64,000 nt of DNA from Ranitomeya imitator (taxonomy: Eukaryota), in assembly GCF_032444005.1 (NCBI RefSeq), contig NC_091287.1, positions 483,600,001 to 483,664,000 of the forward strand. The letters run 5' to 3'. Both the position numbers and the translations under genes were made by a program. The notes under the pieces were generated by a model. It ran no database searches and was not told the origin of the DNA. It saw only the letters and a program-made list of their open reading frames with translations. Each line of letters begins with the position of its first letter. Position 1 is the first letter of the stretch. Shown one piece after another: positions 7,105-54,429 of this stretch.

Positions 7105-8230
7105 AATTTTTACTGTAGCCGTGACATAGTCATATGGACTGCTGTATTTCCTCCCTTTTATTATTTTCAGTTTTGATATTGCTCCTTATACATTTATGGG
7201 TTGGTCCATTGGTTGTATATTATGGTTTCCGCTGTAGTCACCTCTAGTGTAGCGGAGCTGAATCACATTTATAGCGCTGTATCACATTTTTAGCGGTTGT
7301 GCTGCTAAACATCTCCGTGGTTAATCCTCTATACTCACCTTAGAAGCATACTTCGATGTACGGCATTCGGCGCGTGCGTGATATACGGGTGCTATTTATA
7401 TGGTGGGGATTTATTGCGCATGCGCAATGCCTGTTACATTTTGGCATTAAGTGCGCACGCGCTATGGCCTGTTATAGTATTTACGGGGATTTCCGCGCAC
7501 ATATATTGGTGCGTGCGGTAACTTCCCACGCATGCGCAACGCCAGCTGCATTTTAACTGGGGTGATCAGACTGTCACTATGTATATATGCACCTTTATGT
7601 TCGCGGGGACTTTTCCGCGCACGCGCGATGTGCACTGGTAGCAGGGCTAAAGCGGAAGTGACTGCACCAAGGACCCACCTATTGCTCATGTTTTCTCCAA
7701 TGAGAATAGCTCCCTTGCGTATATAAACCGGCTATCCCCCTGCCTAGACACGCCTCCTGAAGAAGCCGTCAGTGAAACGCGCGTTGGGGCAGAGGGACGC
7801 CGAGGAGAGACTACACTGCATACTGCGGGTAACTAGCATCTTTTTATGCCGATATCGGCACTTATCACTTTAGTCATAGGGGCTTCTCCCCTTAGAGTAC
7901 CATATGTGTCACTTGTACAATATAGGATGGTCTAAAAACTTAGACAGGAACACATGATACTACATATGGTCCATACTAGACTATGACCTTTTTCTATTAG
8001 TGAGGTATTTTGCCTCTCTTTACTTTACAGCACCGCAGCATCATAGTATTTAGTGGTTCTCCTATGGATATGTCCCTCTTTTTAATGGTCTTTGTACCCT
8101 TTTTTTGTGAATTTTTGTGATTTTGTGTTTATATATATTTTTTGTCAATTGATGTCTATGTATGTTTTATTTCTGTATAATAAACTATATTTTATTAGAA
8201 AGTACCTTTTGTTTTGGGATTGCTGTGTAG
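7105..8230 (+). mobile_element. Penelope-like (pLTR) remnant with a minimal hammerhead-like motif
   Basis: TATAAA, then CTGAAGA...GAAACGCGCGTTGGGG at 7757-7789, then a T-rich tail with AATAAA; layout typical of PLE pseudo-LTRs; boundaries approximate. Confidence 0.5.
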
Positions 8231-9591
8231 TATTATCACCAAAACTATGTGATTTATGCATATCCAAACAGTGTGGCTGTTCCCTAAAGCTATGTTCACA
8301 CGTTGCGTTTTTGCAGGTTTTTCCCTCAGCAGCCAGGACCTGCTCTCTTGGCAGTAAAAACGCTGCGCTCAAAGCTCCTCTTTTCAAAATGTTTGTGTTT
8401 TGTTTCTTGGTGCGGATTACTTGGGCAATAGATCTACAGTACGTTTAATAAAGTTAGTTTTATTCACCAAAAATGATGCAACAAACGCAACCAAGCGTTT
8501 TTGCACTCATTTTTATACAGATGGAAAAAAAAAACCGCTGAAAGTAGTGACACGCTGCAGATTTAAAAAATGCTGCAGTTTTCCAATACATTCAGGAAAA
8601 GAAAAAAAAAGCCGAAAACAAGTGTGTGCCTAAGATTTCTGAAATCTCAATGATATTGCTGGTACTGTAAAATGCAACTTTTAATTTGCATAAAAAAGCA
8701 GCAAAAAACTGCAACGTGCGGACACAGCCAATGCCTTATTCACATGCATGTTGTCATGTACATGTTCTAGCCACATTTTTCACAGACAGAACAAGAACCC
8801 ATTATAGTCGATGGTGCTGTTTGAGTGATATGACCATTCTTGATCCAAATCACGGATCAAAATCACCCACACTAGTCTATGGGCCAGTGAAAACAACAAC
8901 ACGAGTGCCTTCGTGTGCTGTCCGTTTCCAAAATTGCAATGGGTAGGAGAAGCTGTGTCATTACGAGAAGAATAATAATGGTAAAAATGGACTTACCGAC
9001 AAAAACCACAAAGAAAAAATAACTTATGTATGAAAAATACAAAAAACGGGTGTGTAAATGTTATTAGTGTTCACATGGATTTTGAAAAGTATGCACTAAA
9101 AAAAAAAAAAATCCATATCAAGAACCTTTTCAAATACTATTCGGGCATATATAGGATTTTTCTGCTTGAAATATCCACATTAAAAAAAAAAAAAAAATCT
9201 TTTATAACTTGTTTTTTTCTTTTTACATTTTTGTGTTTGAGACTTTTTTTTTCTGCTTTTACTTATTGAGCGGTCAAATTTGGAGCATTTTTTTCCCCAA
9301 GCAGAAACAATTCAATAATCGACACATGGGAGCAGACAGCGCCAAGTGATTTATAGGCGGGTTTGAACGCTGAAACGAATAGGAAGATTATTGAAATAGT
9401 ATTTGATGAATTTACTTGGCTTTGTGCACACGGAGACTTTTTCAGGTGGATTTTGTGAGGGATCAACCTAAAAAAAAAAAAAAAGTGCCATAAAACGAAC
9501 ATAGTGCACAGTAATGTCAAACGCCAATACAGTTCTCATGCTCCGTCTTATGTCACTTCTGTCAGGCCGTGGAAACCTAAAGAGCTTATAA

Positions 9592-25762: not shown

Positions 25763-26075
25763 GAGAAAAAAGCCGCCCTGGAGAAGGAAAGGGATGAGCG
25801 CATCGCGGAGGCTGAAATCGAGAACCTGAGCGGCGCTCGGCACCTGGAGAGCCAGAAAGTCGCCCATGTTTTGTCTGAGAGGCAGCTGCAGATTAAGCAG
25901 ATCCCATCTGACGGTCACTGCATGTACAGAGCCATCGAACACCAGCTGAAGGAACGCGATAAAATAATCACTGTGACAAATCTCAGACGCCAAACTGCAG
26001 AATACATGCAGAGCCACAGCGATGACTTCCTACCGTTTCTTACTAATTCTGCCACAGGGGAAATGTACACTCACG
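25763..26075 (+). CDS. OTUD6B: OTUD6B exon 4 (OTU catalytic Cys box)
   Basis: EKKAALEKERDERIAEAEIENL...QIPSDGHCMYRAIEHQL...DDFLPFLTN; AG/GT boundaries, phase 0-1. Confidence 0.96.
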
Positions 26076-27088
26076 GTGAGAGATTGGAGCAGGTTATAGA
26101 TACTTGTGGTTAGTTATGGATACATGTAAGAAGATCACTAATGTGAAATCTAGGACCTCAGCCACCACGGACCTTCAGGGGAGATGAATTCACTGCTCCA
26201 GCTCTATGCATACTATGCATTGATTTGTTAGTAAATCTAATAACTTACTCTAAGCAAACTTGGATTTTCCTATTAAACTGTCATTGTCTTATCTGGTTAT
26301 AAAAATATGTAGTTGGTCTGGTAAGTCCTTATCTGAGACAATACAAGATAAAGTAGAACGAAAGGAGAATCCCCATTTTGCACCTTTGTAGCATATCCAC
26401 GGGATATGCCATAGATTAGATGCGGGTCTCCCAAATAGGACCTCAGTCTGTCTCACAAACAGGGTGCTGTCAGTGCAGAGGTGTCGCGATTCCCATACAA
26501 GTGCATACGAATTGTGACCACCTCTTCATCCACTGCAGTGCACATCAGGAACTATTTGGGAGATAGATGCAAGTCCCATTGGTGGTACCCACAGCCTTCT
26601 ACAATAGCTGAGTAGAGATAGCTGATGCCTACTGTTTAACCCCTTAAGTTGTAGCTCTGGCATCTAAGTGGTTCTTGTTCTTCAGGTGACTATTAAAGGC
26701 CCCCGAGGCATGTCATCTTAGTGCCCCGTATATGAGAGACTTGACTGGCTGAATAAACTGCAACACCAAACAATTGCCATATACCCTGCAAGTGAACACA
26801 CTTTAAAGTCCCCTCCCCCTTGGGCTCAAAAATAACTAAAATAAAATCCACACCCAGCGCAATGAATGGAGTAAGAGGTTTTTTTAAATTGTATTATGTT
26901 TCCCCATGTGGAGTGGAGGCAGCCTTTCATCAGTTTGAGCGGCTCCTCTACTAGCAGCAATGTACCGGTTGCATGTTACCTGAATGATTAATAAGGTGCT
27001 ATATGGTGAAAATCTGCTGTTATTGGATGTTGTAACCTGCTGCTCAATCCTTCACCTCCATTACAATATTTTCATGTGTTTTAAACAG

Positions 27089-27150
27089 ATGAATTTGAGA
27101 AATATTGCACTGAAGTGGCAAACACGCCAGCGTGGGGAGGTCAGTTAGAG
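27089..27150 (+). CDS. OTUD6B: OTUD6B exon 5
   Basis: aacag| DEFEKYCTEVANTPAWGGQLE |gtaagt. Confidence 0.95.
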
Positions 27151-27393
27151 GTAAGTCACACGGACTGCGAACAACCGGTATAATGACTGATCCAATATCT
27201 GCAAAAGTAGGACAATGGCGTAATCTTCCCCAGCAAACAAAGTCGGACACTTATGGACTCTGTTTGCTTCATTATAGTGAACAGATACCTGGGACACAGT
27301 TAAATAATGGCCCCGATTCATCAAAGCGATTACACCAGGATTCTGGCGTAAATTTTTTTTTTTTTTTACTCTTCGCCACGACAGCACCCAGTT

Positions 27394-28667
27394 ATTATTA
27401 TTATTATTTATTGTTATAGCGCCATTTATTCCATGGCGCTTTACATGTGAGGAGGGGTATACATAATGAAAACAAGTACAATAATCTTAAACAATACAAG
27501 TCATAACTGGTACAGGAGGAATGAGGACCCTGCCCGCGAAGGCTCACAGTCTACAAGGGATGGGTGAGAATACAGTAGGTGAGGGTAGAGATGGTCATGC
27601 AGCGGTTTGGTCGATCGGTGGTAACTGCAGGTTGTAGGCTTGTCTGAAGAGGTGGGTCTTCAGGTTCTTTTTGAAGGTTTCGATGGTAGGTGAGAGTCTG
27701 ATGTGTTGTGGTAGAGGGTTCCAGAGTAGGGGTGATACGCGAGAGAAATCTTGTATACGATTGTGGGAAGAGGAGATAAGAGGGGAGTAGAGTAGGAGAT
27801 CTTGTGAGGATCGGAGGTTGCGTGCAGGAAAGTACCGGGAGACGAGGTCACAGATGTATGGAGGAGACAGGTTGTGGATGGCTTTGTATGTCATGGTTAG
27901 GGTTTTGTACTGGAGTCTCTGGGCAATGGGGAGCCAGTGAAGGGATTGACAGAGGGGAGAGGCCGGGGAATAGCGGGGGGACAGGTGGATTAGTCGGGCA
28001 GCAGAGTTTAGAATAGATTGGAGGGGTGCGAGAGTGTTAGAGGGGAGGCCACAGAGCAGGAGGTTGCAGTAGTCAAGGCGAGAGATGATGAGGGCATGGA
28101 CTAGGGTTTTTGCAGATTCGTGGTTGAGGAATGAACGGATTCGTGAAATATTTTTGAGTTGAAGTCGGCAGGAAGTGGAAAGGGCTTGGATATGTGGTTT
28201 GAAGGAGAGATCAGCGTCAAGGATTACCCCGAGGCAGCGAGCTTGTGGGACTGGGGAGAGTGGGCAGCCATTTACTGTAATGGATAGGTTCGTTGGGGGG
28301 GGTCGCGCGAGATGGGGGAAAGATGATGAATTCTGTTTTGTCCATGTTAAGTTTTAGAAATCTAGCGGAGAAGAAGGATGAAATAGTGGACAGACATTGA
28401 GGGATTCTGGTTAGTAGGGAGGTGATGTCTGGTCCAGAGATGTAGATCTGTGTGTCGTCAGCATAGAGGTGATACTGAAAGCCATGAGATTCTATGAGTT
28501 GTCCCAGGCCAAAGGTGTAAATGGAGAAGAGCAGGGGCCCTAGGACTGAACCTTGTGGGACTCCGACAGATAGTGGGCGAGGTGAGGAGGTGGTGTGTGA
28601 GTGGGAGACGCTGAATGTCCGGTCTGTTAGGTATGATGAGATCCAGGATAGGGCCAAGTCTGTGATG
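27394..28667 (-). mobile_element. 5'-truncated L2 LINE inserted in the DIRS left ITR
   Basis: [16 protein letters not shown]...YADD; (AAT)n tail at ~27394-27412; CAGTT duplicated at 27389-93 and 28668-72. Confidence 0.9.
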
Positions 28668-29399
28668 CAGTTGAGAGGGATCCGCCCATAGGAACAGGAA
28701 ACCTACAGAATAAAAGGATGCGGTCCCCCTCTCCTCAGTTTAGGTTTCCTGTTCCTATAGGAATCCACAATACCTGCAGTAAGAAGAGGATTCCTGGGCC
28801 AAAAGCATCCGCCTGTGTGGTCTCTGGGGGAACAGCAGGGGCTGCGGTGCCAGATGCAGCGATGGGGGAGCCCCTGCTTGCAGCCTCCTCCCTCCTCTGT
28901 CAGTCATCCATGGTCCGAGATGGGCCGCCCGGTTCCATGAGGATGCGCGCGCGCTGCTGCGGCCACCGGGTTTTTTCAAAACTTATAGTGGCAGCTGCGC
29001 GGTATGGAGAGCGGCGCGTCTGACCCGGAAGTAGCGGGAGCACTTTCGGGTTGGTCCGGAGAGGCAGGAGACACTGCGCCAAATTTAAAAATGGAGGCGC
29101 CTGACATTACCGGCTAATGAAGCTACAAGCAGCAGCACAGCACCCTCCTTGCAAAGAAGGAAACGCTAGAAGCGGCAAAGAAAAAAGCAGTGGTTGGCCT
29201 AAAGATCAGCGAGCCACAAGCAGACAGCAGGGTAGAAATGATGAACTACCTAAGACCTGGGTGTCTCCACCTCCAGAGCTGATACCTTTCAGCTTCATTG
29301 GGTGAGTGTTAAAAGATCCTCTTCCTATATGCTGATCTATTCCTCCTATGTCCCCTTCTTCTCTTAGACCAAGAAAAGGACACACAAGTCCAAACATAA

Positions 29400-30600
29400 A
29401 GAATGTGCTATGTGCACGCAGCTCCTCCTGGATTCATATACTAAAATGTTATGCCCTGACTGTATTAATCTAACTTTACGGGAAGAAAGTGTAATGACAC
29501 CTACGGATGTAAGAGCTATAATACAGGAAGAATTGCAGGCCTTAAGGCAGACCAGTGGTTCAAGCCTTCAGAATAGATCCCTTTCACCAGTGGCCAGTTC
29601 AGATTCAGATGATGCGCAGGAAAAATCCTCTTGACTCTCCAGGATCCCAATCAAGTTCATCTGAAAATGAGGGTTGTCTTTGCCTCCCTGATGGTAGCAT
29701 AGATAATTTAATAAAATCTGTCAGGAAGACAATGGGATGCGCTGATACAAAAGGATCTAAGTCTGCACAAGACATAATGTTTGCCGGGCTGGCCCAGAAA
29801 AAACGTAGAACCTTTTCGGTAATTCCAACTAATAAAGAGTTGATTAAAAAGGAATAGGATAAAGCAGAACCTTCGAGGCTTCTTACCATCATCCTCTAAG
29901 AGACGCTATCCTTTTAGTGACGATGAACCAAGTTCATGGTCTAAAATCCCTAAGGTGGATGCTGCAGTAGAATCTACATCAAAACAGTCTGTACTGCCAG
30001 TGGAAGATTCAGGGGTTTTACCGGACCCTCTAGATCGTAAGGCAGAAAGCATGTTAAAAAGATCATGGGAAGCCAACACGGAGGCATTCAAACCGGCCAT
30101 TTCTGGCACATGTACCGCCAGATCATTATTAGTTTGGGTGGATCAGTTGGAGGAGCAAATTAGAGGCAAAATCCAAAGAGAAAAGATTCTGCCGGCAATG
30201 CCTCTAATTAAGGAAGCTGTTGCATTCCTAGCGGATGCATCAGCAGACTCCCTACGTTTGGCAGCCAGATCAGCGGGCCTGGTGAACACAGCCCGGCGAG
30301 CACTCTGGTTAAAAAGCTGGAAGGGCGATGCACAAGCAAAAGCAAAACTTTGAGCAATCCCATGCCAGGGTGAGTTCCTTTTTGGGAAAACGTTGGATGA
30401 CCTCCTGGCCAAAGCGGGGGAAAGAAAGAAAGGATTCCCTAATCAATCTCTTCCTTCCTACAGGAGAGCCTTAAGGAGACGACCCTTTTTCAGGAATAAA
30501 ACATTTGAGACCCAAAAGGATTGTTGGGAATCAAGGGACAAAAAGGTGCATTGTTTAGCAGATCCTTTGCCGCAAGCCATAACAAGTACCGATAGTCTTC
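29400..30600 (+). pseudogene. DIRS gag-like ORF fragments
   Basis: CPDC motif; DPLDRKAESMLKR...ARRALWLKSW; multiple stops. Confidence 0.75.
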
Positions 30601-30744
30601 AAGTTGGTAGTAGACTAAACATTTTTTTCCAAAGATGGAAACTTATAACATCAAGCCTGTGGATTCTTGATATAATACAGTCCGGATTAAAATTAGAATT
30701 TGAACAAATCCCTCCGGTTTCATTTATAGTAACATCTCTTAGGA

Positions 30745-32026
30745 CAGAAATAAGCTAGGCTCAGGTAATCAAGAAGAACCAAGAATGACTAACTGAAAAA
30801 GCGGGTTCCTATATACAATTAAAATATAACCTTTATTCTTCAAATTTAAAAGAAGGTGCAAACATCTAGTGCTGACAAAAGTGCAAAGTGCATACGTACA
30901 ACATAGAGACACATATAAAAATATATATAAATGAGCATATAACCGCAAAGTAAGATATTGTCTGGTGTGAGGAAAACACACCAGTATATTCAACAGAAAC
31001 AGGCTAGAGACTATGAATCCGTATATCTCTAGATCTCACGGCTCTATACCACAACTGTAATCAAAAGGCGGGATAACGTTCCAGCAGGCTATGTCTATAA
31101 TCAGTTAACAGCCTCTGGATAGCTGCTGTTGCAGTATCAACGTATCCCTACCCAACGGTATATAGCTCTTCCTAATGCCCAAAAAACCACGGTGACCCTA
31201 TTGCCATATATGCGCCCTCCAATAACAACACGTTAGGGCAAAGTAACATATAGAGTCATATATGTAGTATAACCAATGATACTCATCTGGCTTCTGCTGA
31301 TCATATTTTGGCAGCCTAATGCAGTGATGAGTATCAGTCGCCCAGAGTACCGGTCATTTCACTTCCAACCGCGTTATTCCCTGTGGGCCCGTTTTCTTGT
31401 ATAGTGCTTCCCTATGCTATACAAGAAAACGGGCCCACAGGGAATAACGCGGTTGGAAGTGAAATGACCGGTACTCTGGGCGACTGATACTCATCACTGC
31501 ATTAGGCTGCCAAAATATGATCAGCAGAAGCCAGATGAGTATCATTGGTTATACTACGTATATGACTCTATATGTTACTTTGCCCTAACGTGTTGTTATT
31601 GGAGGGCGCATATATGACAATAGGGTCACCGTGGTTTTTTGGGCATTAGGAAGAGCTATATACCGTTGGGTAGGGATACGTTGATACTGCAACAGCAGCT
31701 ATCCAGAGGCTGTTAACTGATTATAGACATAGCCTGCTGGAACGTTATCCCGCCTTTTGATTACAGTTGTGGTATAGAGCCGTGAGATCTAGAGATATAC
31801 GGATTCATAGTCTCTAGCCTGTTTCTGTTGAATATACTGGTGTGTTTTCCTCACACCAGACAATATCTTACTTTGCGGTTATATGCTCCTTTATATATAT
31901 TTTTATAAGTGTCTCTATGTTGTACGTATGCACTTTGCACTTTTGTCAGCACTAGATGTTTGCACCTTCTTTTAAATTTGAAGAATAAAGGTTATATTTT
32001 AATTGTATATAGGAACCCGCTTTTCC
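30745..32026. repeat. Foldback insertion: 612-bp inverted arms (30793-31404 / 31417-32028), 12-nt loop, 17-bp TSD
   Basis: Arms are reverse complements with about 5 mismatches seen; AGTAACATCTCTTAGGA at 30728-44 and 32027-43; removal restores the DIRS frame IVTSLRSLEQQKAL. Confidence 0.93.
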
Positions 32027-34400
32027 AGTAACATCTCTTAGGAGTCTGGAACAACAAAAGGCTCTTGAATTAGAGATCCTGTCCTTACTATCAAAAAAAG
32101 TTCTGATAGAGGTTCCCAAAGATCAGGAAGGAAGGGGGTTTTATTCCCCTTTTATTTCTGATCACTAAACCTGATTGTTCATTCTGGACCATTATTAATC
32201 TCAAAAAATGTAATTCTTTTTTATATAACCGTACCTTTAAGATGGAATCCATTGGTTCTACTATCAAACTTTTATTTCCTAGATGTGTGATGGCGGGAAT
32301 AGACTTAAAAGATGCCTATTACCATCTCCCCATTCACACCAAGCATCAACAATACCTGAGAGTGGCAGTCAACCTGGCAGGACACATTCGTCATTTCCAA
32401 TATGCAGCAATGCCCTTTGGTCTTTCGATGGCTCCTCGGATATTCACGAAAGTAATGTTAGAGGTGATGGCTTACTTGCGCCAACAGGATACTCTAATTA
32501 TACCCTACCTAGATGATTTTTCTAGTAGTAGGAAGATCTATCTCTGTGTGAGAACCGCCTTTCTAATACAATTTCATCCCTGCAGGAGTTAGGATGGATC
32601 GTCAATTTTAAAAAATCCAGATTGGTTCCAGAAACCTTCCAATCCTTACTGGGACTACATCTAGACTCCGTAAGTTAGAGGTGTTTTCTTCCAGAGTCAA
32701 AAAAATTGACTATAATATCAAAAGTGACGTTAGCAAGGAAAAACCCTAAGATGTCACTAAGGGAAGCTATGTCTTTACTGGGGTCCCAAACCTCATGTAT
32801 TCCAGCGGTTCCATGGGCCCGGTATCATGTTAGAACCTTACAACATGAAATCCTGCATGTTCAAGAGATCTCGCAGGGTCATCTGGAAAGGAAACTAACT
32901 CTTTCCCAAAGTGTAATAGAATCGCTGACCTGGTGGTTGGATATAGACCTCCTTTCCAGGGGAGTACCCTGGATAATAGAGCCTTCCAAAATAATCACCA
33001 CTGACGCTAGTCCCTCGGGATGAGGTGCCCACATTGGAGATGATTTAGGGTACCGTCACACTATACGATTTACCTACGATCACGACCAGCGATACGACCT
33101 GGCCGTGATCGTAGGTAAATCGTAGTGTGGTCGCTGGGGAGCTGTCACACAGACAGCTCTCCAGCGACCAACGATGCCGAGGTCCCCGGGTAACCAGGGT
33201 AAACATCGGGTTACTAAGCGCAGGACCGCGCTTAGTAACCCGATGTTTACCCTGGTTACAAGCGTAAAACTAAAAAAAAACAAACGGCTCATACTTACAT
33301 TCTGGTGTCCGTCAGGTCCCTTGCCGTCTGCTTCCCGCACTCACTGACTGCCGGCCGTAAAGTGAAAGCACAGCCGCTGTGCTCTTTCACTTTACGGCCG
33401 GCAGTCACAGTGCGGGAAGCAGACGGCAAGGGACCTGACGGACACCAGAATGTAAGTATGTGCTGTTTGTTTTTTTTCAGTTTTACGCTTGTAACCAGGG
33501 TAAACATCGGGTTACTAAGTGCGGCCCTGCGCTTAGTAACCCGATGTTTACCCTGGTTACAAGCGAACGCATTGCTGGATCGCATCGCCACACACACCGA
33601 TCTAGCGATGACAGCGGGAGATCCAGCGATGAAACAAAGTTCCAAACGATCTGCTACGACGTACGATTCTCAGCAGGATCCCTGATTGCTGCTGCGTGTC
33701 AGACACAGCGATATCGTAACGATATCGCTGGAACGTCACGAATCGTACCGTCGTAGCGATCGAAATGGCAGTGTGTGACGGTACCCTTAGTACAGGATGT
33801 CTGGAATCCTGCAGAGTCACTCTATTCTTCAAATTGGAAAGAGTTAAAAGCGGTTGATCATGCTTTGAATTATTTTCTTCCACAGATTCAGGGAACACAT
33901 GTAAGAATCTTGTCGGACAATTCCACCACAGTGGCATATGTGAATAGTCAAGGGGGAGCACTGTTAGAAAATCTAATGTCCATAGCAGCAGATATCTTTC
34001 TTCTAGCAGAAACCCATCTTTCATCCCTAACAGCTCTTCATATCAAAGGGGTAGAGAACACAAAAGCAGACTTTCTCAGTCGAAACATGCTACGCCAGGG
34101 AGAGTGGACTCTCAACAATTTTATATTTTCAGAAAAATAGTAAAATTATGGGGTACTCCACAAATAGACCTGTTCGTCACCAGAGAGAACAGACAGGTTC
34201 AAATGTTCACCTCCCTGAACAAAATAGACCATCCGGACATGCTTGACTCACTTCAGTATCCCTGGAATTTCGATCTAGCTTATGCTTTTCCTCCGATGAC
34301 GCTGATTCCACTGGTGCTCAGGAAAATCAGGAGGGAAAAAGCAAGGGTGATCCTTATCGCACCCTTCTGGCCGAAGAGACCGTGGTTCTCTTGTCTCTGA
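32027..34400 (+). pseudogene. DIRS RT / RNase H / methyltransferase-like fragments
   Basis: IDLKDAYYH, PFGLSMAPRIFTK, YLDD; TTDAS, ELKAV, SDNSTTVAY, ADFLSR; IDLF...YAFPP...IAPFWPKRPWF. Confidence 0.88.
33048..33786. mobile_element. Harbinger-type MITE in DIRS RNase H
   Basis: TIR GGGTACCGTCACAC, TTA TSD on both sides; removal restores GDDLVQDVW. Confidence 0.9.
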
Positions 34401-34413
34401 GCCATGTCGATGT

Positions 34414-35906
34414 GTGACCCTTGGATTAACATCAGATCCGAAGCTGCTATCTCAAGGGCTGTTCTTCCATCCTCAAGTGAAAGGGCTACACTTAACGGCG
34501 TGGAAGTTGAGGCAGCTATTGACTTCAAGGGGCTTTTCTGACAACCTTATTAACACTCTACTATTAAGTAGGAAAAAATCTACTACAATAATATATAGTA
34601 GTGTGGAAAAAATTCTTAAATTTTCATACGGAACCTTTCACTAGACATGCTCCGATCTTTGCCATCCTAGAATTTCTACAGAAAGGTCGAGAACTAGGAT
34701 TGTCTGTAAACACCTTAAAAGTACAGGTCTCCGCCTTAGGGGCTGTGTGGGTGCAATATAGCGGGAGATAGATGGGTCACGAGATTCATCAGGGCATGTG
34801 AGCGAAGTAATCCGATCCACATTCCACAGTTACCACCTTTGGGATTTAAACCTAGTCCTCGATGCTTTAACTAATTTCCCATTTGAACCGCTAGATTCTG
34901 TTCCCTTGAATATCTTGACATATAAGGTAGCTCCGTTAGCGTTAACATCAGCCAGAAGGGTCAGTGACATCCAGGCTCTCTCCATAGACCCACCCTTCCT
35001 GTTAGTATTCCAAGATCGGGTAATCCTTTAAACCAGACCCCTCATACCTCCCAAAAGTGGCGTCTAACTATCATAGGTCTCAGGAAATATTTCTCCCTTC
35101 CTTCTTTGATACTCCAATAACTACAGAGGAACAAAGGTTCCATACCTTAGATGTTAAGGCCTCTTTCACATTTCCGTCGGTACAATTGTGCACAACGTGG
35201 GCAGCGGATGCAGTTTTCAGACGCATCCGCTGCCCATTGTGAGTTCCGGGGAGGAGGGGGCGGAGTTCCGGCCACGCATGCGCGGTCAGAAATGGCGGTT
35301 TCGACGGACAAAAAACGTTACATTGAACGTTTTTTCGTAACGACGGGACACCAAATACCGAAACATCCAGTGCACGACGTATGGAACGTGTCCATACGTC
35401 GCGATGTGTCGGTAATACAAGTCTATGTGAAAAAAAACAAACGCATCCTGCGGGCAACTTTGCAGGATGCGTTTTTTTTCACAGAACGACGCATTGCGAC
35501 ATTCACATTCCGACGGAAGTGTGAAAGAGGCCTAAAAGAGCCATCTTGACCTATATAGAAAGATCTCAGGCTTGGAGGCAGAGTAGAGCTCTGTTTGTGT
35601 CCTTTTAGGGCCACAGGAATGGACATGGAGTTACAAAAGCCACCTTATCCCGGTGGATCAGAGAGGCTCTGCTTGGCTTATTCGTCAAAAGGTGAAAATC
35701 CTCTGGAAGGCATAAAAGCACATACTGCGCGAGCCATGGCATCCTTCTGGGCGGAGAAAGCAGACGTGCGAATTGATTTAATTTGTAAGGCCGCAACATG
35801 GTCAACAACTTCCACCTTTTACAACCATTATAGACTCGATCTATCTACATCTTCTGACCTGGCTTTTGGTAGAGCTGTCCTTGGCACAGTAATCCCACCA
35901 AGATGA
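34414..35906 (+). pseudogene. DIRS tyrosine recombinase fragments
   Basis: LTSARRVSDI, TLDVKRAILTY (after MITE removal), AHTARAMA, KAATWS..TFYNHYRLD. Confidence 0.85.
35158..35532. mobile_element. Harbinger-type MITE in DIRS YR
   Basis: TIR GGCCTCTTTCAC, TAA TSD on both sides. Confidence 0.9.
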
Positions 35907-37043
35907 TGGTTCTCTGAAAGTCTCTCATGTGGGTGCTGTCATGGCGAAGGGTAAAAAGCCGGATTACTTACCAGTAATGCTCTTTTAATGAGTCCATGAC
36001 AGCACCCATTCACTACCCTCCCTAATTATACACAATTTCCTCCTTTTTAAGCTCACAAATAATGGTTGTATAGAGTGTTTAAGACCTTTATATTGCTGAT
36101 ATGAATTAATACTAAAACCTTGCGGTTCCTCTCGTACTCTGAAAACTAAACCGAGGAGGAGAGGGGGACCGCCTCCTTTTATTCTGTAGGTTTCCTGTTC
36201 CTATGGGCGTATCCCTCTCATGTGGGTGCTGTCGTGGACTCATTAAAAGTGCATTACCGGTAAGTAATCCGGCTTTTTGAAAATTTTCAAAAAATGTTTG
36301 CAATAGAGTTGCGTAAATATTTGGCGACTTTTGGCATTTTCTCTCTTCCTTTTGCTTCTTTGGCAAAATGAACATTGTGGTGCGCCTTGTGTTGGAAATG
36401 TAACTCCAGTCTCTGAGTGGGGTAAGACTGGTAGTGAGGCGGAGACCACTTGTCAGATGCTCCCAATTCATAAAATGTGTGCAACCTTTAATAATCAGGA
36501 GAGTCTTGACTGCGGCACATCATCCCATCAAGATCAGTGTGAAGTTCACCAGTCTGGATGAATCGAGACGTGGACCCATTTCCTTCTCGATGGAGTTAGG
36601 AGCATTTAACGTAATGTGGACGCGTCCTAACTAAAGAATCCTTCCATATACTGATGACTGAATCGTGTTCCTCCACACACATAATGACTGACCCCTGGTC
36701 CATTGTAAGGTGCTTGGAAGGAATAAATCATGTGTCAGTTCTTTGAAAAACAAAATTCCATATAGGTATAAATATGTGCGCTCAATACAAACTGAACAAG
36801 CCCTACATTTACAATGTTCTCACTGTACCAGAAACCTTCCATTCCCTTTAATAATCTTGTTGCCCAACTTTAAACCCCGTTTAGCTCTTTGATCTCCTCT
36901 TCACAGTGCGGTGTATAGCAGTGGTAACTTACACACATCCCGTCTAGTGTAGATCTGGACCAGTTTAGCTATAAAATATTAAGATTCATAATGAACATAT
37001 TAGTCTACTATAACGATGGAAATTATTTGTCTCCTTATTGAAG

Positions 37044-37150
37044 CTCCGGGCTGTGTCGCACATACTGCAGACCCCTATAGAGGTCGTCCAGGCAGACGTC
37101 TCGCCCATTATCATTGGGGAAGAGTATACGAACAATCGAATAACTGTGGT
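37044..37150 (+). CDS. OTUD6B: OTUD6B exon 6
   Basis: gaag| [35 protein letters not shown] |gtaagt, phase 0-2. Confidence 0.93.
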
Positions 37151-37893
37151 GTAAGTATCTTAATACCATTGTGACCAGCTATGGTTCAACTAAATGTAGT
37201 CATAGGAAAAGTCTACCTGCCATACATGTAAAGCAGGCACATGTGTAGCGTTTGCTGAGGCGCTCACTACTATCTAACAATTGTTAAACTGCTGCTGTGA
37301 TTGTCACATCAGCCTGCTGAAGCCCCCTTCATTCCCACCTTAGCCGTCCTATGAAGCCTAACTGAATGGGAGATTATTAAAATACAACATATACTGCAAA
37401 ACTAAACAATTGGGGTGTATATTATACAACATATACTGCATTTCAAATTAGACTTATCCCAAAATAAACATATCTGATATTGCTGCATCTGTAAAGAGCA
37501 AATTCATCCATATAAAAAATATTAATTTGGGACCGATAAACTGTGGCTTGGCTTGGAAAAAAAAAAAAAAGACACTGTTGTTTTTTTTGCATCTATCCAT
37601 CTCACAAAAAATGGCATCACAGATACATTATTTGTAGATTTTATATTGTTCTGTTTTTGTTTTACTGAAATAAATAAAATTAAAAAATTAAAATCACATG
37701 GTGCGTGACAGAAAAAATGAAAACTTTGTGTCACTATGGAAGATGAGGAAAAAATAAATGGAAAATTGTCCAGTCACTAAAACTGGTTAATTAGTCCGTG
37801 AGGATTTACCATTCAATGGTGTTAATGGATTTCTTGAGTAGCAACCAGCATGGACAAAATAATGAAACCTCATCTTTTTTTTTTTCTTTTCAG

Positions 37894-37969
37894 ATATATG
37901 CGCCACGCTTATGGACTGGGAGAGCATTATAACTCTGTCGAAGCGCTGAGTGTGACGCCTGCGGACTAG
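37894..37969 (+). CDS. OTUD6B: OTUD6B exon 7 (catalytic His box, stop)
   Basis: ttttcag| VYMRHAYGLGEHYNSVEALSVTPAD*; summed CDS 882 nt = 293 aa; AATAAA at 38464-69. Confidence 0.94.
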
Positions 37970-46952: not shown

Positions 46953-47085
46953 TAACAGATTAGGTGAAGTGCTCACTAACACAGATTAGGTGAAGAGCTC
47001 ACTAACACAGATTAGGAGAAGAGCTCACTAATACAGATTAGGAGCAGAGCTCACTAGCACAGATTAGGAGAAGAGATCACTAATA

Positions 47086-47392
47086 GTGATGAGTGAATAT
47101 ACTCGGTACTCGAGATTTCTCGAACATGCTCGGGGGTCCTCCAAGTATTTTTTAGTGTTCGGAGATTTAGTTTTTATTGCTGCAGCTGAATGATTTACAT
47201 CTGTTAGCCAGCAAAAGTAAATGTGGGGATTCCCTAGCAACAAGGCAACCCCCACATGTACTTATGCTGGCTGACAGATGTAAATCATTCAGCTGCGGCG
47301 CTAAAAACTAAAACTCCGGTCACTAAAAAATACTCGAAGGACGCCCAAGCATGCTCGCGAAATCTCAAGTAACAAGTATATTCGCTCATCAC
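47086..47392. mobile_element. TA-flanked MITE (TIR GTGATGAG(T/C)GAATATAC)
   Basis: Terminal inverted repeats with TA on both sides. Confidence 0.75.
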
Positions 47393-47838
47393 TACTCACT
47401 AACAGATTAGGAGAAAAGCTCACTAACATAGATTTAGACAAATTTGTGAATAATATTTCAGAGAAAAAGGTCTGTTGTGTACATAGAAAAATTCTTAGAT
47501 CTGGAGTTCCTATTTTTGTTCAGTGTATAGAATATCATTTTTTTTATTAAGTATTCACAGCAGACATTTCTACACCAAAAAAATTGCCTCTTGGTGTGAA
47601 AAAAGGCTGTGTACAATACAGCCACTTTTTTAGTGTGTTTTTTTTCTCTCATTTAGTTGAAAAAACATTGAAAGAATTGACATGCTGAAGATTGAAACTG
47701 CTTCAAATCTGCAAGGAAAAAATAAACGGTATGAGATTTTAGAAATTGTATTCACTTTTCCGCTACTGAAATACCCTGCCTTTTTTTGTCACCTGAGTGT
47801 GGTCCGATATCCGCAAACACAGAGGATGGAGAAATTAA

Positions 47839-48166
47839 AGGGACACTGTCACCTGAATTTGGAGGGAACAACCTTCAGACATGGAGGCGGGGTTTTTGTG
47901 TTTTTGATTCACCCTTTCCTTACCCGCTGGCTGCATGCTGGCTGCAATATTGGATTGAAGTTCATTCTCTGTCCTCCATAGTACACGCCTGCGCTAGGCA
48001 AGATTGCCTTGTGCAGGCGTGTACTATGGAGGACAGAGAATGAACTTCAATCCAATATTGCAGCCAGCATGCAGCCAGCGGGTAAGGAAAGGGTGAATCA
48101 AAAACACAAAAACCCCGCCTCCATGTCTGAAGATTGTTCCCTCCAAATTCAGGTGACAGTGTCCCT
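47839..48166. mobile_element. TTAA-flanked palindromic MITE (T2/Kolobok-like); relatives at 23312-23507 and 53485-53812
   Basis: TTAA|AGGGACACTGTCACCTG...CAGGTGACAGTGTCCCT|TTAA; the whole element is a near-perfect hairpin. Confidence 0.85.
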
Positions 48167-48527
48167 TTAAGCTCTTTGTCTTCTCAGCACCCATGCTGCT
48201 ATTCTCTCATGAGAGAATCGGATCACACTAAGGTGAGCGCTCTGACAGTTTGATCCGAGTGACATTAGCATAATCGTATGTATTCTCTCACATGAGAAAA
48301 TGTACGCTTATACTGATGAAAAAATGCACCTGCCATGTACATCCTCATGAATGAGGCCACTGCCATAAAACAATGCCTACGCAGAGAAGTAAATGGAAAA
48401 GTTAGGCTGGGGCTTTATAAATGATTATTGCCCCAAGTCCTAAACTATTAAAAGTATCTACACCAGAAAACTTACCGGAGTACAGCAATAAATCGATCCA
48501 TTAACTAATCGAAAAATGACTCTCTAC

Positions 48528-53191: not shown

Positions 53192-53484
53192 CTGAAATAA
53201 CAGTTAAAAGACATAATCAGTGCAGAGAATATATACCGTAGATAGGAAAAAATAAAGCATCCTTATAGGGTATATGTCTGTTTTTCAGGCGGATTCTGCT
53301 CGAAAAATAGCAGAGAAACTGATGCAAAAAAATGAGCATAATTCACAGCAATGACAAAACCAACACTCCAGTGCACATGTTCAGTCTTATGTTACTTCTT
53401 CCAAATTTTGGAAACCGTGATACTTTAGAAATAAGAAGACAGCTGTGGTTCCACCGCAAAGACGACAGCAAAACTGCTAGTTAA

Positions 53485-53812
53485 AGGGACTCTGTCACCT
53501 GAATTTGGCGGGACTGGTTTTGGGTCATATGGGCGGAGTTTTCAGGTGTTTGATTCACCCTTTCCTTACCCGCTGGCTGCATGCTGGCCGCAATATTGGA
53601 TTGAAGTTCATTCTCTGTCCTCCATAGTACACGCCTGCGCAAAGCAATCTTGCCTTGCGCAGGCGTGTACTATGGAGGACAGAGAATGAACTTCAATCCA
53701 ATATTGCAGCCAGCATGCAGCCAGCGGGTAAGGAAAGGGTGAATCAAACACCTGAAAACTCCGCCCATATGACCCAAAACCAGTCCTGCCAAATTCAGGT
53801 GACAGGTTCCCT
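53485..53812. mobile_element. TTAA-flanked palindromic MITE
   Basis: AGGGACTCTGTCACC...GGTGACAGGTTCCCT with TTAA on both sides. Confidence 0.85.
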
Positions 53813-54429
53813 TTAAGCTGCTACAGGACAAAAAATTGCTGGCTTTTTCCTGAAGTTTCTTGGCCTAGGAAAACTTTGGCGGGGCTGCCGGTGTCTTAAA
53901 GGCATCATGTGCACCTTGCTTTAAAGCCCAATACATACGGTAATTGCGATTGCATCTTCTCTTTTTTATCTAGTTTTTGTTGGTTTTTGCCTGTTTTTCG
54001 TTTACTTCCTATTTTTCTTTAATTTTCCACTCTTCTTTTTCTTTTCAGCCCTTTCTTCACATCGCAATTTTTTATTTTATTTTTTTCAATTTTTTTTCCT
54101 CCCCTTCCAAGGACCGTAACTTTTTTTATTCTTTCTTCAGTATAGCTATATGAGGGATGGTTTTGGTGGGACAAGTTGCACTTTTTGAATGACACCATCT
54201 ATTTTGCCATGTGGTATACTGAAAAACTGGAAAAAAAATTCCATGTGTGGAGAAATTCTGGAAAAAAAAAAGGTAATTCCATGTTTTTAAGGTTTTTTAT
54301 TTATCATGTTCATTATGTGGTAAACATACCCTGGCAATATGATTCTCTAGGTCAGCAAGAATACAGAGATTTAAATAATAATTACACTAGCACCCCTAAA
54401 TATGTGACATAGATAAAGCAATACTAATC

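What the first reader, a model, noticed from the sequence alone, without database searches (positions are those of the whole stretch)
30728..32043. 1.28-kb near-perfect foldback (612-bp arms, 12-nt loop) with a 17-bp target-site duplication
Seen: 48 bp of unique sequence, then 612-bp arms at ~99% identity (about 5 mismatches) around the loop TGCTTCCCTATG, flanked by a perfect 17-bp direct repeat. Excision restores the host DIRS frame. There is no ORF; each arm reads outward into a T-rich stretch with AATAAA, like the Penelope-type tail at ~8100-8200. Established: MITE/DNA-transposon TSDs are short (about 2-10 bp), long variable TSDs point to target-primed retrotransposition, and PLE insertions often carry inverted pLTR parts. 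Inference: a non-coding hairpin element mobilised through RNA, or a fold-back product of reverse transcription. Because it sits in an OTUD6B intron, each pre-mRNA would carry a ~600-bp dsRNA stem (possible endo-siRNA, ADAR substrate, splicing effect), and the DNA could extrude a cruciform. Best candidate for an undescribed element class in this window.
Basis: partly seen in the sequence, partly recalled or inferred. Interest (0 to 1): 0.72.

Follow-up and report, generated by a model that had tools for sequence, protein, structure and literature searches.

The report
Mirror-image retroelement insertion in frog intron
A 1.28-kb DNA hairpin in a frog-like genome is one copy-and-paste insertion that laid down two mirror-image copies of the end of a common non-coding repeat, a layout already published for Penelope-like jumping genes, so it is a clean example and not a new kind of element.

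Summary
There are 613-nt arms with 5 mismatches, a 12-nt spacer, a 47-nt piece on the left side only, and a perfect 17-bp direct repeat (14 bp if the 3-nt AGT overlap belongs to the arm). The structure sits in a decayed DIRS copy inside a 9.9-kb intron of an OTU-domain gene.

It is not a hairpin-shaped element class. Public contigs of the same organism show that the arm is the end of a dispersed repeat. The main form of that repeat starts exactly at the left boundary, includes the 47-nt piece, and runs past the fold point without turning back. Both arms share private differences from that family.

One RNA-templated insertion therefore most likely laid down two mirror-image, 5'-truncated copies of one template. 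My inferred path is cDNA primed at the left nick, about 668 nt, snap-back, 613 nt back, then joining through AGT.

Head-to-head copies, a one-sided tail and a mid-length duplication are the published signature of Penelope-like elements. This scan has already reported the same geometry many times on other DNA of this genome.

It is not shown that this family is Penelope-like: the retained part has no hammerhead and no RT or endonuclease. No independent read crosses the fold itself.

The parts
30728..30744 (.). Left copy of the target-site duplication (AGTAACATCTCTTAGGA).
   Evidence: Perfect 17-bp direct repeat. It is present once in paralogous DIRS copies (joint 30727->32027).
30745..30791 (-). 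One-sided 'tail': the last 44-47 nt of the repeat family (sense on the - strand). It is present on the left copy only.
   Evidence: It has no partner in the right arm. Family contig X1 record 2 (depth 48) begins exactly at 30745 and runs through to 30896.
30792..31404 (-). Left arm: a 5'-truncated copy of the family's 3' part. On the + strand it reads as antisense, that is, as first-strand cDNA.
   Evidence: Collinear family contigs X1 records 2-4 have depth 44-48 and are 93-97% identical.
31405..31416 (.). Turn-around spacer. 31405-31412 (TGCTTCCC) still follows the family sequence. 31413-31416 (TATG) is extra.
   Evidence: X1 record 4 matches without mismatch from 31374 to 31412, then runs on 103 nt unlike the window. 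The sequence was read.
31417..32029 (+). Right arm: the mirror copy (sense on +). It starts 8 nt short of the left copy's inner end and stops 44-47 nt short of the family terminus. Its last 3 nt (AGT) are shared with the duplication.
   Evidence: The right junction is present in an independent run: X3 record 29, 449 nt, 31932-32379.
32027..32043 (.). Right copy of the target-site duplication.
28672..36220 (+). Host: a decayed DIRS-like retrotransposon with 65-nt inverted ends. Its reading frame is split by the insert.
   Evidence: Pfam RVT_1, RT_RNaseH and LAP2alpha-like pieces. Inverted pair 28672-28736 / 36156-36220. Frame continuity across the site.
27154..37040 (+). Intron of an OTU-domain (OTUD6-like) gene that contains the DIRS and the insert.
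   Evidence: Collinear OTU profile pieces 1-57, 52-74 and 71-101 in open segments 25763-26110, 27085-27180 and 37014-37151. Donor GAG|gtaagt and acceptor ttgaag|CTC.

Best explanation
This is one target-primed reverse-transcription event that inserted two mirror-image, 5'-truncated copies of the 3' end of an abundant non-coding repeat. It is not a hairpin-shaped mobile element.

Inferred path:
1. The target was nicked on both strands 14-17 bp apart.
2. The + strand 3'-OH after 30744 primed cDNA at the very 3' end of the family RNA.
3. After about 668 nt (to 31412), plus 4 extra bases, the cDNA 3' end folded back on itself.
4. It was then extended along the nascent cDNA for 613 nt.
5. This second arm stopped 44-47 nt before the end and was joined to the downstream target end through a 3-nt overlap (AGT).
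6. Fill-in of the staggered nicks gave the duplication.

The enzyme was most likely that of a Penelope-like element (about 0.5). Head-to-head copies, a one-sided tail of a few tens of bases, no poly(A) and a variable mid-length duplication are that class's published signature.

Shown: the anatomy, the repeat-family origin of the arms, the family terminus at the left boundary, the non-palindromic family continuation, and the empty site.

Inferred: the RNA intermediate, the snap-back step, and the enzyme.
For: - **Anatomy**: the two ends of the insert are unlike each other, so there is no terminal inverted repeat at the true boundaries.
- **Family contigs**: records of one depth class (44-48) are collinear with the left copy.
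  - One begins exactly at 30745.
  - One crosses the fold point to 31412 and runs on 103 nt unlike the window.
- **Copy number**: word depth is tens to about 1000 across the arm, so it is a multi-copy family.
- **Shared private differences**: the arms differ from each other by 0.8% but from the family contigs by 3-7%. They share the same private differences (for example 31179 = 31642). This points to one template and one event.
- **Mutations on both arms**: the left is derived at 31263 and the right at 31617. This fits later divergence.
- **Empty site**: joint 30727->32027 in paralogous DIRS copies.
- **Inner ends**: they differ by only 8-12 nt, as snap-back predicts.
- **Literature**:
  - cDNA snap-back before 5' junction formation is documented in cells for R2 proteins (PMC11371274).
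  - Palindromic inverted junctions in Penelope elements have been interpreted as self-priming (PMC3846280).
  - Penelope-like insertions carry head-to-head 5'-truncated copies and a one-sided 30-40-bp tail (PMC8557442).
  - A Penelope-like protein extends both strands in vitro from two internal start sites that bracket the tail (PMC11167929).
Against: - No RT or GIY-YIG coding sequence and no hammerhead core lie in the retained 672 nt. Penelope-like identity therefore rests on geometry alone.
- The tail (44-47 nt) is a little longer than the published 30-40 bp. Its RNA does not fold better than shuffles (z = 0.02).
- The target is not markedly AT-rich.
- No independent contig shown crosses the spacer, so the fold itself rests on this assembly.
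- All runs were short assembled contigs, which cannot prove or disprove a 613-nt palindrome.
- Gene conversion between the arms could make them look younger than they are.
Confidence: 0.72

Rival explanations
1. Dual-strand priming without snap-back. A dimeric Penelope-like RT primed cDNA from both nicked target strands on two RNA molecules: the left at the terminal start site and the right at a second start site 44-47 nt inward. The two cDNAs were then joined head to head by a template jump.
For: - In vitro, a Penelope-like protein cuts and extends both strands and starts at two internal sites that bracket the tail (PMC11167929).
- The one-sided 44-47-nt piece is explained directly.
- Earlier notes of this scan describe tails of 37-60 nt in this genome. 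These are leads only.
Against: - Two independent cDNAs would have to stop within 8-12 nt of each other, although the family continues past that point.
- The 3-nt AGT overlap at the right junction suggests annealing, whereas the published start sites are not homologous to the target.
Confidence: 0.17
2. A non-coding hairpin element of its own class. On this reading the master copy is itself a foldback that spreads through RNA.
For: - Clean boundaries, a long duplication and no ORF.
- One contig hints at another fold point in the family (joint 30839->31982, short side 20 nt).
Against: - The dominant family contig passes the fold point unbranched and continues with unlike sequence.
- The family terminus includes the one-sided piece, which a symmetric hairpin element would carry on both sides or on neither.
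- The geometry is already explained by published mechanisms.
Confidence: 0.03
3. A cut-and-paste foldback transposon or MITE with 613-bp terminal inverted repeats.
For: Foldback-type transposons and palindromic MITEs are present in this genome. See the other palindromes in the window and earlier notes.
Against: - The true insert ends (CAGAAATAAG... and ...CTTTTCCAGT) are not inverted copies of each other.
- A 14-17-bp duplication is beyond the 2-10 bp of known DNA transposon superfamilies (established knowledge).
- Family copies are not palindromic.
Confidence: 0.02
4. An assembly or library artefact, or a later DNA-level fold-back duplication of a simple insertion.
For: - No independent contig shown crosses the spacer.
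- Palindromes are a known failure mode of long-read libraries.
This is a lead only.
Against: - The five arm mismatches fall on both arms.
- Correct unique flanks lie on both sides with an exact duplication.
- The right junction is seen in an independent study (X3 record 29).
- An artefactual foldback read would duplicate one flank in inverted orientation. A later duplication would not leave the duplication flanking the whole palindrome.
Confidence: 0.06

Closest known systems
Penelope-like element (PLE) insertion units: inverted 5'-truncated copy plus one-sided 'tail' (Evgen'ev & Arkhipova; PMC8557442, PMC3846280, PMC11167929)
   Same: - Head-to-head inverted 5'-truncated copies inside one target duplication.
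- An extension of a few tens of bases at one end only.
- No poly(A).
- A duplication of variable, non-canonical length.
- A near-palindromic inverted junction.
- A microhomology-type junction.
   Different: - No pLTR-ORF-pLTR body.
- No RT or GIY-YIG sequence.
- No hammerhead motif in the 672 nt kept.
- The tail is 44-47 nt, not 30-40.
- The family is an unnamed non-coding frog repeat. Its link to an autonomous PLE is untested.
cDNA snap-back 5' junctions in R2-protein-mediated TPRT (PRINT experiments, PMC11371274)
   Same: [quoted passage not shown]
- This gives an upstream target junction to antisense-oriented element sequence.
   Different: - Those are engineered, site-specific rDNA insertions in human cells.
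- Here the event is natural, in a frog-like genome, with near-full-length copy-back (613 of 668 nt) and an unknown enzyme.
L1 5' inversion by twin priming (Ostertag & Kazazian 2001; from my own knowledge, not read here)
   Same: - Both target 3'-OH ends are available after staggered nicks.
- An inverted segment lies inside one 7-20-bp duplication.
- Microhomology occurs at the junctions.
   Different: - Twin priming inverts the part upstream of the direct part, so the two segments are different stretches of the RNA and one end carries poly(A).
- Here both segments are the same stretch and there is no poly(A).
Foldback (FB/NOF) transposons and palindromic MITEs
   Same: Long inverted arms, little or no coding capacity, and hairpin-forming potential.
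   Different: - Those have matching terminal inverted repeats at the true ends, short fixed duplications (9 bp for FB) and palindromic family members.
- None of these holds here.

Membership tests
Penelope-like elements (PLE) | RT (telomerase-like) with GIY-YIG endonuclease ORF in the family, or a 3' module shared with such an element | not testable with these tools
   - The copy keeps only 672 non-coding nt.
- The family's upstream part is seen only as an unprinted 103-nt contig overhang.
- Two metagenome scans found nothing.
Penelope-like elements (PLE) | Hammerhead ribozyme motif in the pLTR (canonical clades) | tested here: not met
   - No Rfam hit at gathering score or at E<=10.
- No CTGANGA...GAAA core on either strand, even with one mismatch and a helix II test.
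- Caveats: only the retained 672 nt were tested, some PLE clades lack canonical hammerheads (PMC8557442), and Rfam had no positive control in this window.
Penelope-like elements (PLE) | Inverted 5'-truncated copy adjacent head to head, inside one target duplication | tested here: met
   - Arms 30792-31404 and 31417-32029 with 3' ends outward.
- The family terminus is at the outer end and the truncation at the inner end.
Penelope-like elements (PLE) | Optional 30-40-bp tail at one end only | tested here: met
   - A 44-47-nt piece at 30745-30791 on the left only. It is part of the family sequence.
- It is slightly longer than the published range.
Penelope-like elements (PLE) | Two alternative 3' ends (RT start sites) among family copies | not tested
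   This needs a genome-wide census of family ends. The contig tables do not resolve it.
Foldback transposons / palindromic MITEs | Matching terminal inverted repeats at the insert boundaries and a short fixed target duplication | tested here: not met
   - The boundaries CAGAAATAAG... and ...CTTTTCCAGT are unrelated.
- The duplication is 14-17 bp.
Foldback transposons / palindromic MITEs | Other family members are palindromic too | tested here: not met
   The dominant family contig runs 103 nt past the fold point without turning back (X1 record 4).
L1-type twin-priming inversion | Poly(A) at the 3' end; inverted segment taken from the RNA part upstream of the direct segment | tested here: not met
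   There is no poly(A) at either end, and both segments are the same stretch.
TPRT snap-back product (a process, not a family) | Antisense copy joined to the sense copy through a minimal loop at the cDNA 3' end, with the outer junction to target DNA | tested here: met
   - The left copy ends at family position 668, followed by 4 extra nt.
- The right copy starts at position 660, giving a 12-nt loop.
- There is a 3-nt overlap at the outer junction.

The most novel reading that the evidence does not exclude
The arm family may be a ribozyme-free, ORF-less parasite of the frog's Penelope-like machinery. Alternatively it may be a LINE-dependent repeat whose RT snaps back unusually often. In either case it would routinely seed long, perfect hairpins. 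This copy, transcribed within every pre-mRNA of a conserved OTU deubiquitinase gene, would then feed a roughly 610-bp dsRNA into siRNA or ADAR pathways.
Probability: 0.15. Interest if true: 0.45.

Novelty: new member of a known kind. Interest (0 to 1): 0.22.

Why it matters
- It is a clean natural example of how reverse transcription at a chromosomal nick can write a long perfect palindrome in one step. Both junctions, the turn-around point (8 templated plus 4 extra bases) and the empty site can all be read.
- Such insertions are one way retroelements create hairpin-forming DNA and dsRNA-forming introns.
- They also confuse assemblers and repeat annotators, which tend to call them foldback transposons or new element classes.
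- As a discovery it is minor. The geometry is published, its in vitro basis was reported in 2024, and this scan has met it repeatedly in this genome.

Tried and rejected
- **Rfam.** The whole window at gathering score and the element at E<=10 gave only trivial miRNA-hairpin matches.
- **Hammerhead core searches**. There are none in the element. The CTGAAGA...GAAA at 7757 is not a convincing hammerhead, so I had no in-window positive control.
- **Similarity of the arm's 3' end to the supposed Penelope tail at 7600-8320.** It is no better than shuffles, and no other copy of the arm lies in the window.
- **RNA fold of the terminal 126 nt.** It is no more stable than shuffles.
- **Fetching other copies.** Two exact-pattern scans of metagenome contigs found nothing.
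- **Big protein searches.** I did not use them. The arms have no credible ORF, and the 74-aa TTG ORF has no Pfam match.
- **Comparison with the LINE 3' end at about 27.4 kb.** It is unrelated.
- **Earlier findings.** A search for OTUD6B found no note.
- **Rejected readings.**
  - DNA transposon or MITE, because of the asymmetric ends, the long duplication and the non-palindromic family.
  - L1 twin priming, because both segments are the same stretch and there is no poly(A).
  - Two independent insertions, because the arms are 99.2% alike yet 3-7% from the family, and one duplication flanks the whole structure.
Full report
**1. Observation**

The structure is real in the sequence and beyond any chance expectation.
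- The arms are 30792-31404 and 31417-32029, 613 nt each. They differ at five positions (30796, 30913, 30932, 31204, 31263).
- The spacer is TGCTTCCCTATG (31405-31416).
- 47 nt (30745-30791) have no partner on the right.
- AGTAACATCTCTTAGGA occurs perfectly at 30728-30744 and 32027-32043.
- The right arm and the right repeat overlap by AGT. The duplication can therefore be read as 14-17 bp and the one-sided piece as 44-47 nt.
- No other copy of the arm lies in the 64-kb window.
- The longest ORF is 74 codons from TTG, of low complexity, with no Pfam match.
- As RNA the insert is predicted to form one stem of about 610 bp, at -1163 kcal/mol.

**2. Surroundings**

- The insert splits the reading frame of a decayed DIRS-like retrotransposon. 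Pfam finds RVT_1, RT_RNaseH and a LAP2alpha-like gag piece. The element has 65-nt inverted ends at 28672-28736 and 36156-36220.
- Reading across the site without the insert and one repeat copy gives a continuous frame for about 45 more codons. The DIRS copy's own frameshifts begin after that.
I built no mended or consensus element.
- The DIRS lies in a roughly 9.9-kb intron of an OTU-domain gene on the + strand.
- Open segments 25763-26110 (DGHCMYRAIE motif, OTU E = 1.1e-13), 27085-27180 and 37014-37151 match OTU profile positions 1-57, 52-74 and 71-101 in order.
- A GAG|gtaagt donor follows about 27153, and a ttgaag|CTC acceptor lies at about 37041.
- I searched the exons one by one by reference and made no joined model. 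The name OTUD6B itself was not tested.

**3. What the arms are**

The results were:
- In the largest DNA run of the same organism, the arm is multi-copy. Word depth is about 45-200 over most of it and about 1000 over 30818-31039.
- Three contigs of one depth class (48, 46, 44) are collinear with the left copy.
  - One begins exactly at 30745, the first base after the duplication, and runs through the 47-nt piece to 30896.
  - One covers 30896-31262.
  - One covers 31233-31412 and then continues for 103 nt that match nothing in the window.
- Four conclusions follow.
  - The 47-nt piece belongs to the repeat family.
  - The family's terminus is the left insert boundary.
  - The first 8 nt of the 'loop' are still family sequence.
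  - The family's main form does not turn back at the fold point.
- The arms differ from these contigs by 3-7% but from each other by 0.8%. They share the same private differences (for example 31179 and its mirror 31642).
- The arm-to-arm mismatches that can be polarised fall on both arms (left derived at 31263, right at 31617).
- The exact empty site (joint 30727->32027, 16 ambiguous bases) is present in paralogous DIRS copies.
- A 449-nt contig from an independent study spans the right junction (31932-32379, 10 differences).
- Contigs from a second organism carry 150-nt and 126-nt arm pieces identical to the window.
- No listed contig crosses the spacer. Short-word assemblies could hardly do so.

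**4. Mechanism**

- The outer ends are a family terminus and the inner ends are truncations. Both copies therefore have their 3' ends outward and are 5'-truncated, which is the pattern of target-primed reverse transcription.
- The two insert ends are unlike each other and there is no poly(A). A 14-17-bp duplication exceeds what DNA transposon superfamilies make (established knowledge).
- The inner ends differ by only 8 nt of template (family positions 668 and 660), plus 4 extra bases (TATG).
- This is what a fold-back of one nascent cDNA on itself predicts. It would be a coincidence for two independent cDNAs on a template that continues further.
- The extra bases and the repeat CTAT-G-CTATAC at 31412-31422 look like a stutter at the turn. 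That is my inference only.
- The second arm ends 44-47 nt short of the terminus and meets the target through AGT. This resembles the microhomology joins of 5' junctions.
- cDNA snap-back before 5' junction formation has been observed directly for R2 proteins in cells (PMC11371274).
- Arkhipova and colleagues read the palindromic inverted junctions of Penelope elements as self-priming (PMC3846280).

**5. Comparison with the known**

Penelope-like elements are described as follows:
- They are highly 5'-truncated and often carry an inverted 5'-truncated copy at the 5' end.
- They have a 30-40-bp tail at one end only (PMC8557442; PMC3846280).
- In 2024 a purified Penelope-like protein was shown to cut and extend both target strands. 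It starts reverse transcription at two internal RNA sites, and the tail corresponds to the stretch between them. The authors call this signature unique to the class (PMC11167929).

The present insert has that geometry. Membership of the family in the class is not shown:
- It has no RT or GIY-YIG sequence.
- It has no hammerhead core on either strand.
- The tail RNA does not fold better than chance.
- It shows no similarity to the supposed Penelope tail at 8.1 kb.

I could not retrieve the family's upstream part. I put about 0.5 on Penelope-like machinery. The rest goes to another non-LTR RT with snap-back.

**6. Earlier notes of this scan**

Searches by words show that this geometry has been reported many times on other pieces of this same poison-frog-like genome. 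The reports describe a head-to-head pair, one arm about 37-60 nt longer, and a 14-18-bp duplication. Follow-ups called it the standard Penelope-like signature. One note describes a CR1 palindrome and one a ribozyme-free non-coding repeat inserted in Penelope style. These are unchecked leads. They agree with what I found independently on this element, and I do not count them as evidence.

**7. Verdict**

- The 'undescribed element class' is not supported.
- The arms' 0.8% divergence suggests a fairly recent event. Gene conversion between arms cannot be excluded.
- The proposed consequences remain untested. These are dsRNA in the OTU gene's pre-mRNA, small RNAs, editing and cruciform extrusion.
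- Interest is low to moderate: a tidy, fully readable example of a known process.

Noticed in passing
window 25763-26110, 27085-27153, 37041-37151, about 37890-37966 (+): Exons of an OTU-domain deubiquitinase gene (catalytic DGHCMYRAIE motif; last exon ends ...GLGEHYNSVEALSVTPAD). Directly after its stop codon the frame repeats LSVTPAD* several times, which indicates a short tandem repeat at the 3' end of the gene.
   Followed up: partly
window 33190-33341 / 33409-33560: A second, unrelated palindromic insert inside the same DIRS copy. It has 152-nt arms at 97%, a 67-nt spacer, is GC-rich and contains nested short hairpins. It looks like a MITE.
   Followed up: no
window 47821-48184 and 53481-53816; also 47084-47394: Two copies of one palindromic family (181- and 167-nt arms, 2-nt spacer, 87% alike to each other). 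A third palindrome has 152-nt arms and a 7-nt spacer.
   Followed up: no
window 7757-7777: CTGAAGAAGCCGTCAGTGAAA resembles a hammerhead core, but it fails a helix II test and gets no Rfam match at E<=10. The 'Penelope-type' label of the neighbouring 8.1-kb tail is therefore unverified.
   Followed up: partly
window 30839 / 31982 (mirror positions in the arms): One contig of the large DNA run (depth 14.7, short side only 20 nt) joins 30839 to 31982. This is what another copy of the family folded back only about 95 nt from its terminus would look like. It is a weak hint that head-to-head copies with other fold points exist.
   Followed up: no
window 30818-31039: This 220-nt part of the arm has about 10-20 times the word depth of the rest of the arm and of the terminal 74 nt. 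A much more abundant related subfamily, or a shared module, carries it. An AT-rich variable patch lies at about 30915-30935.
   Followed up: no
window 30873-31152: Contigs from a run labelled as a different organism (B) carry 150-nt and 126-nt arm pieces identical to this copy, although this copy is 3-7% from the family's main contigs in organism A. This suggests a very close relative, or a shared locus or subfamily.
   Followed up: no
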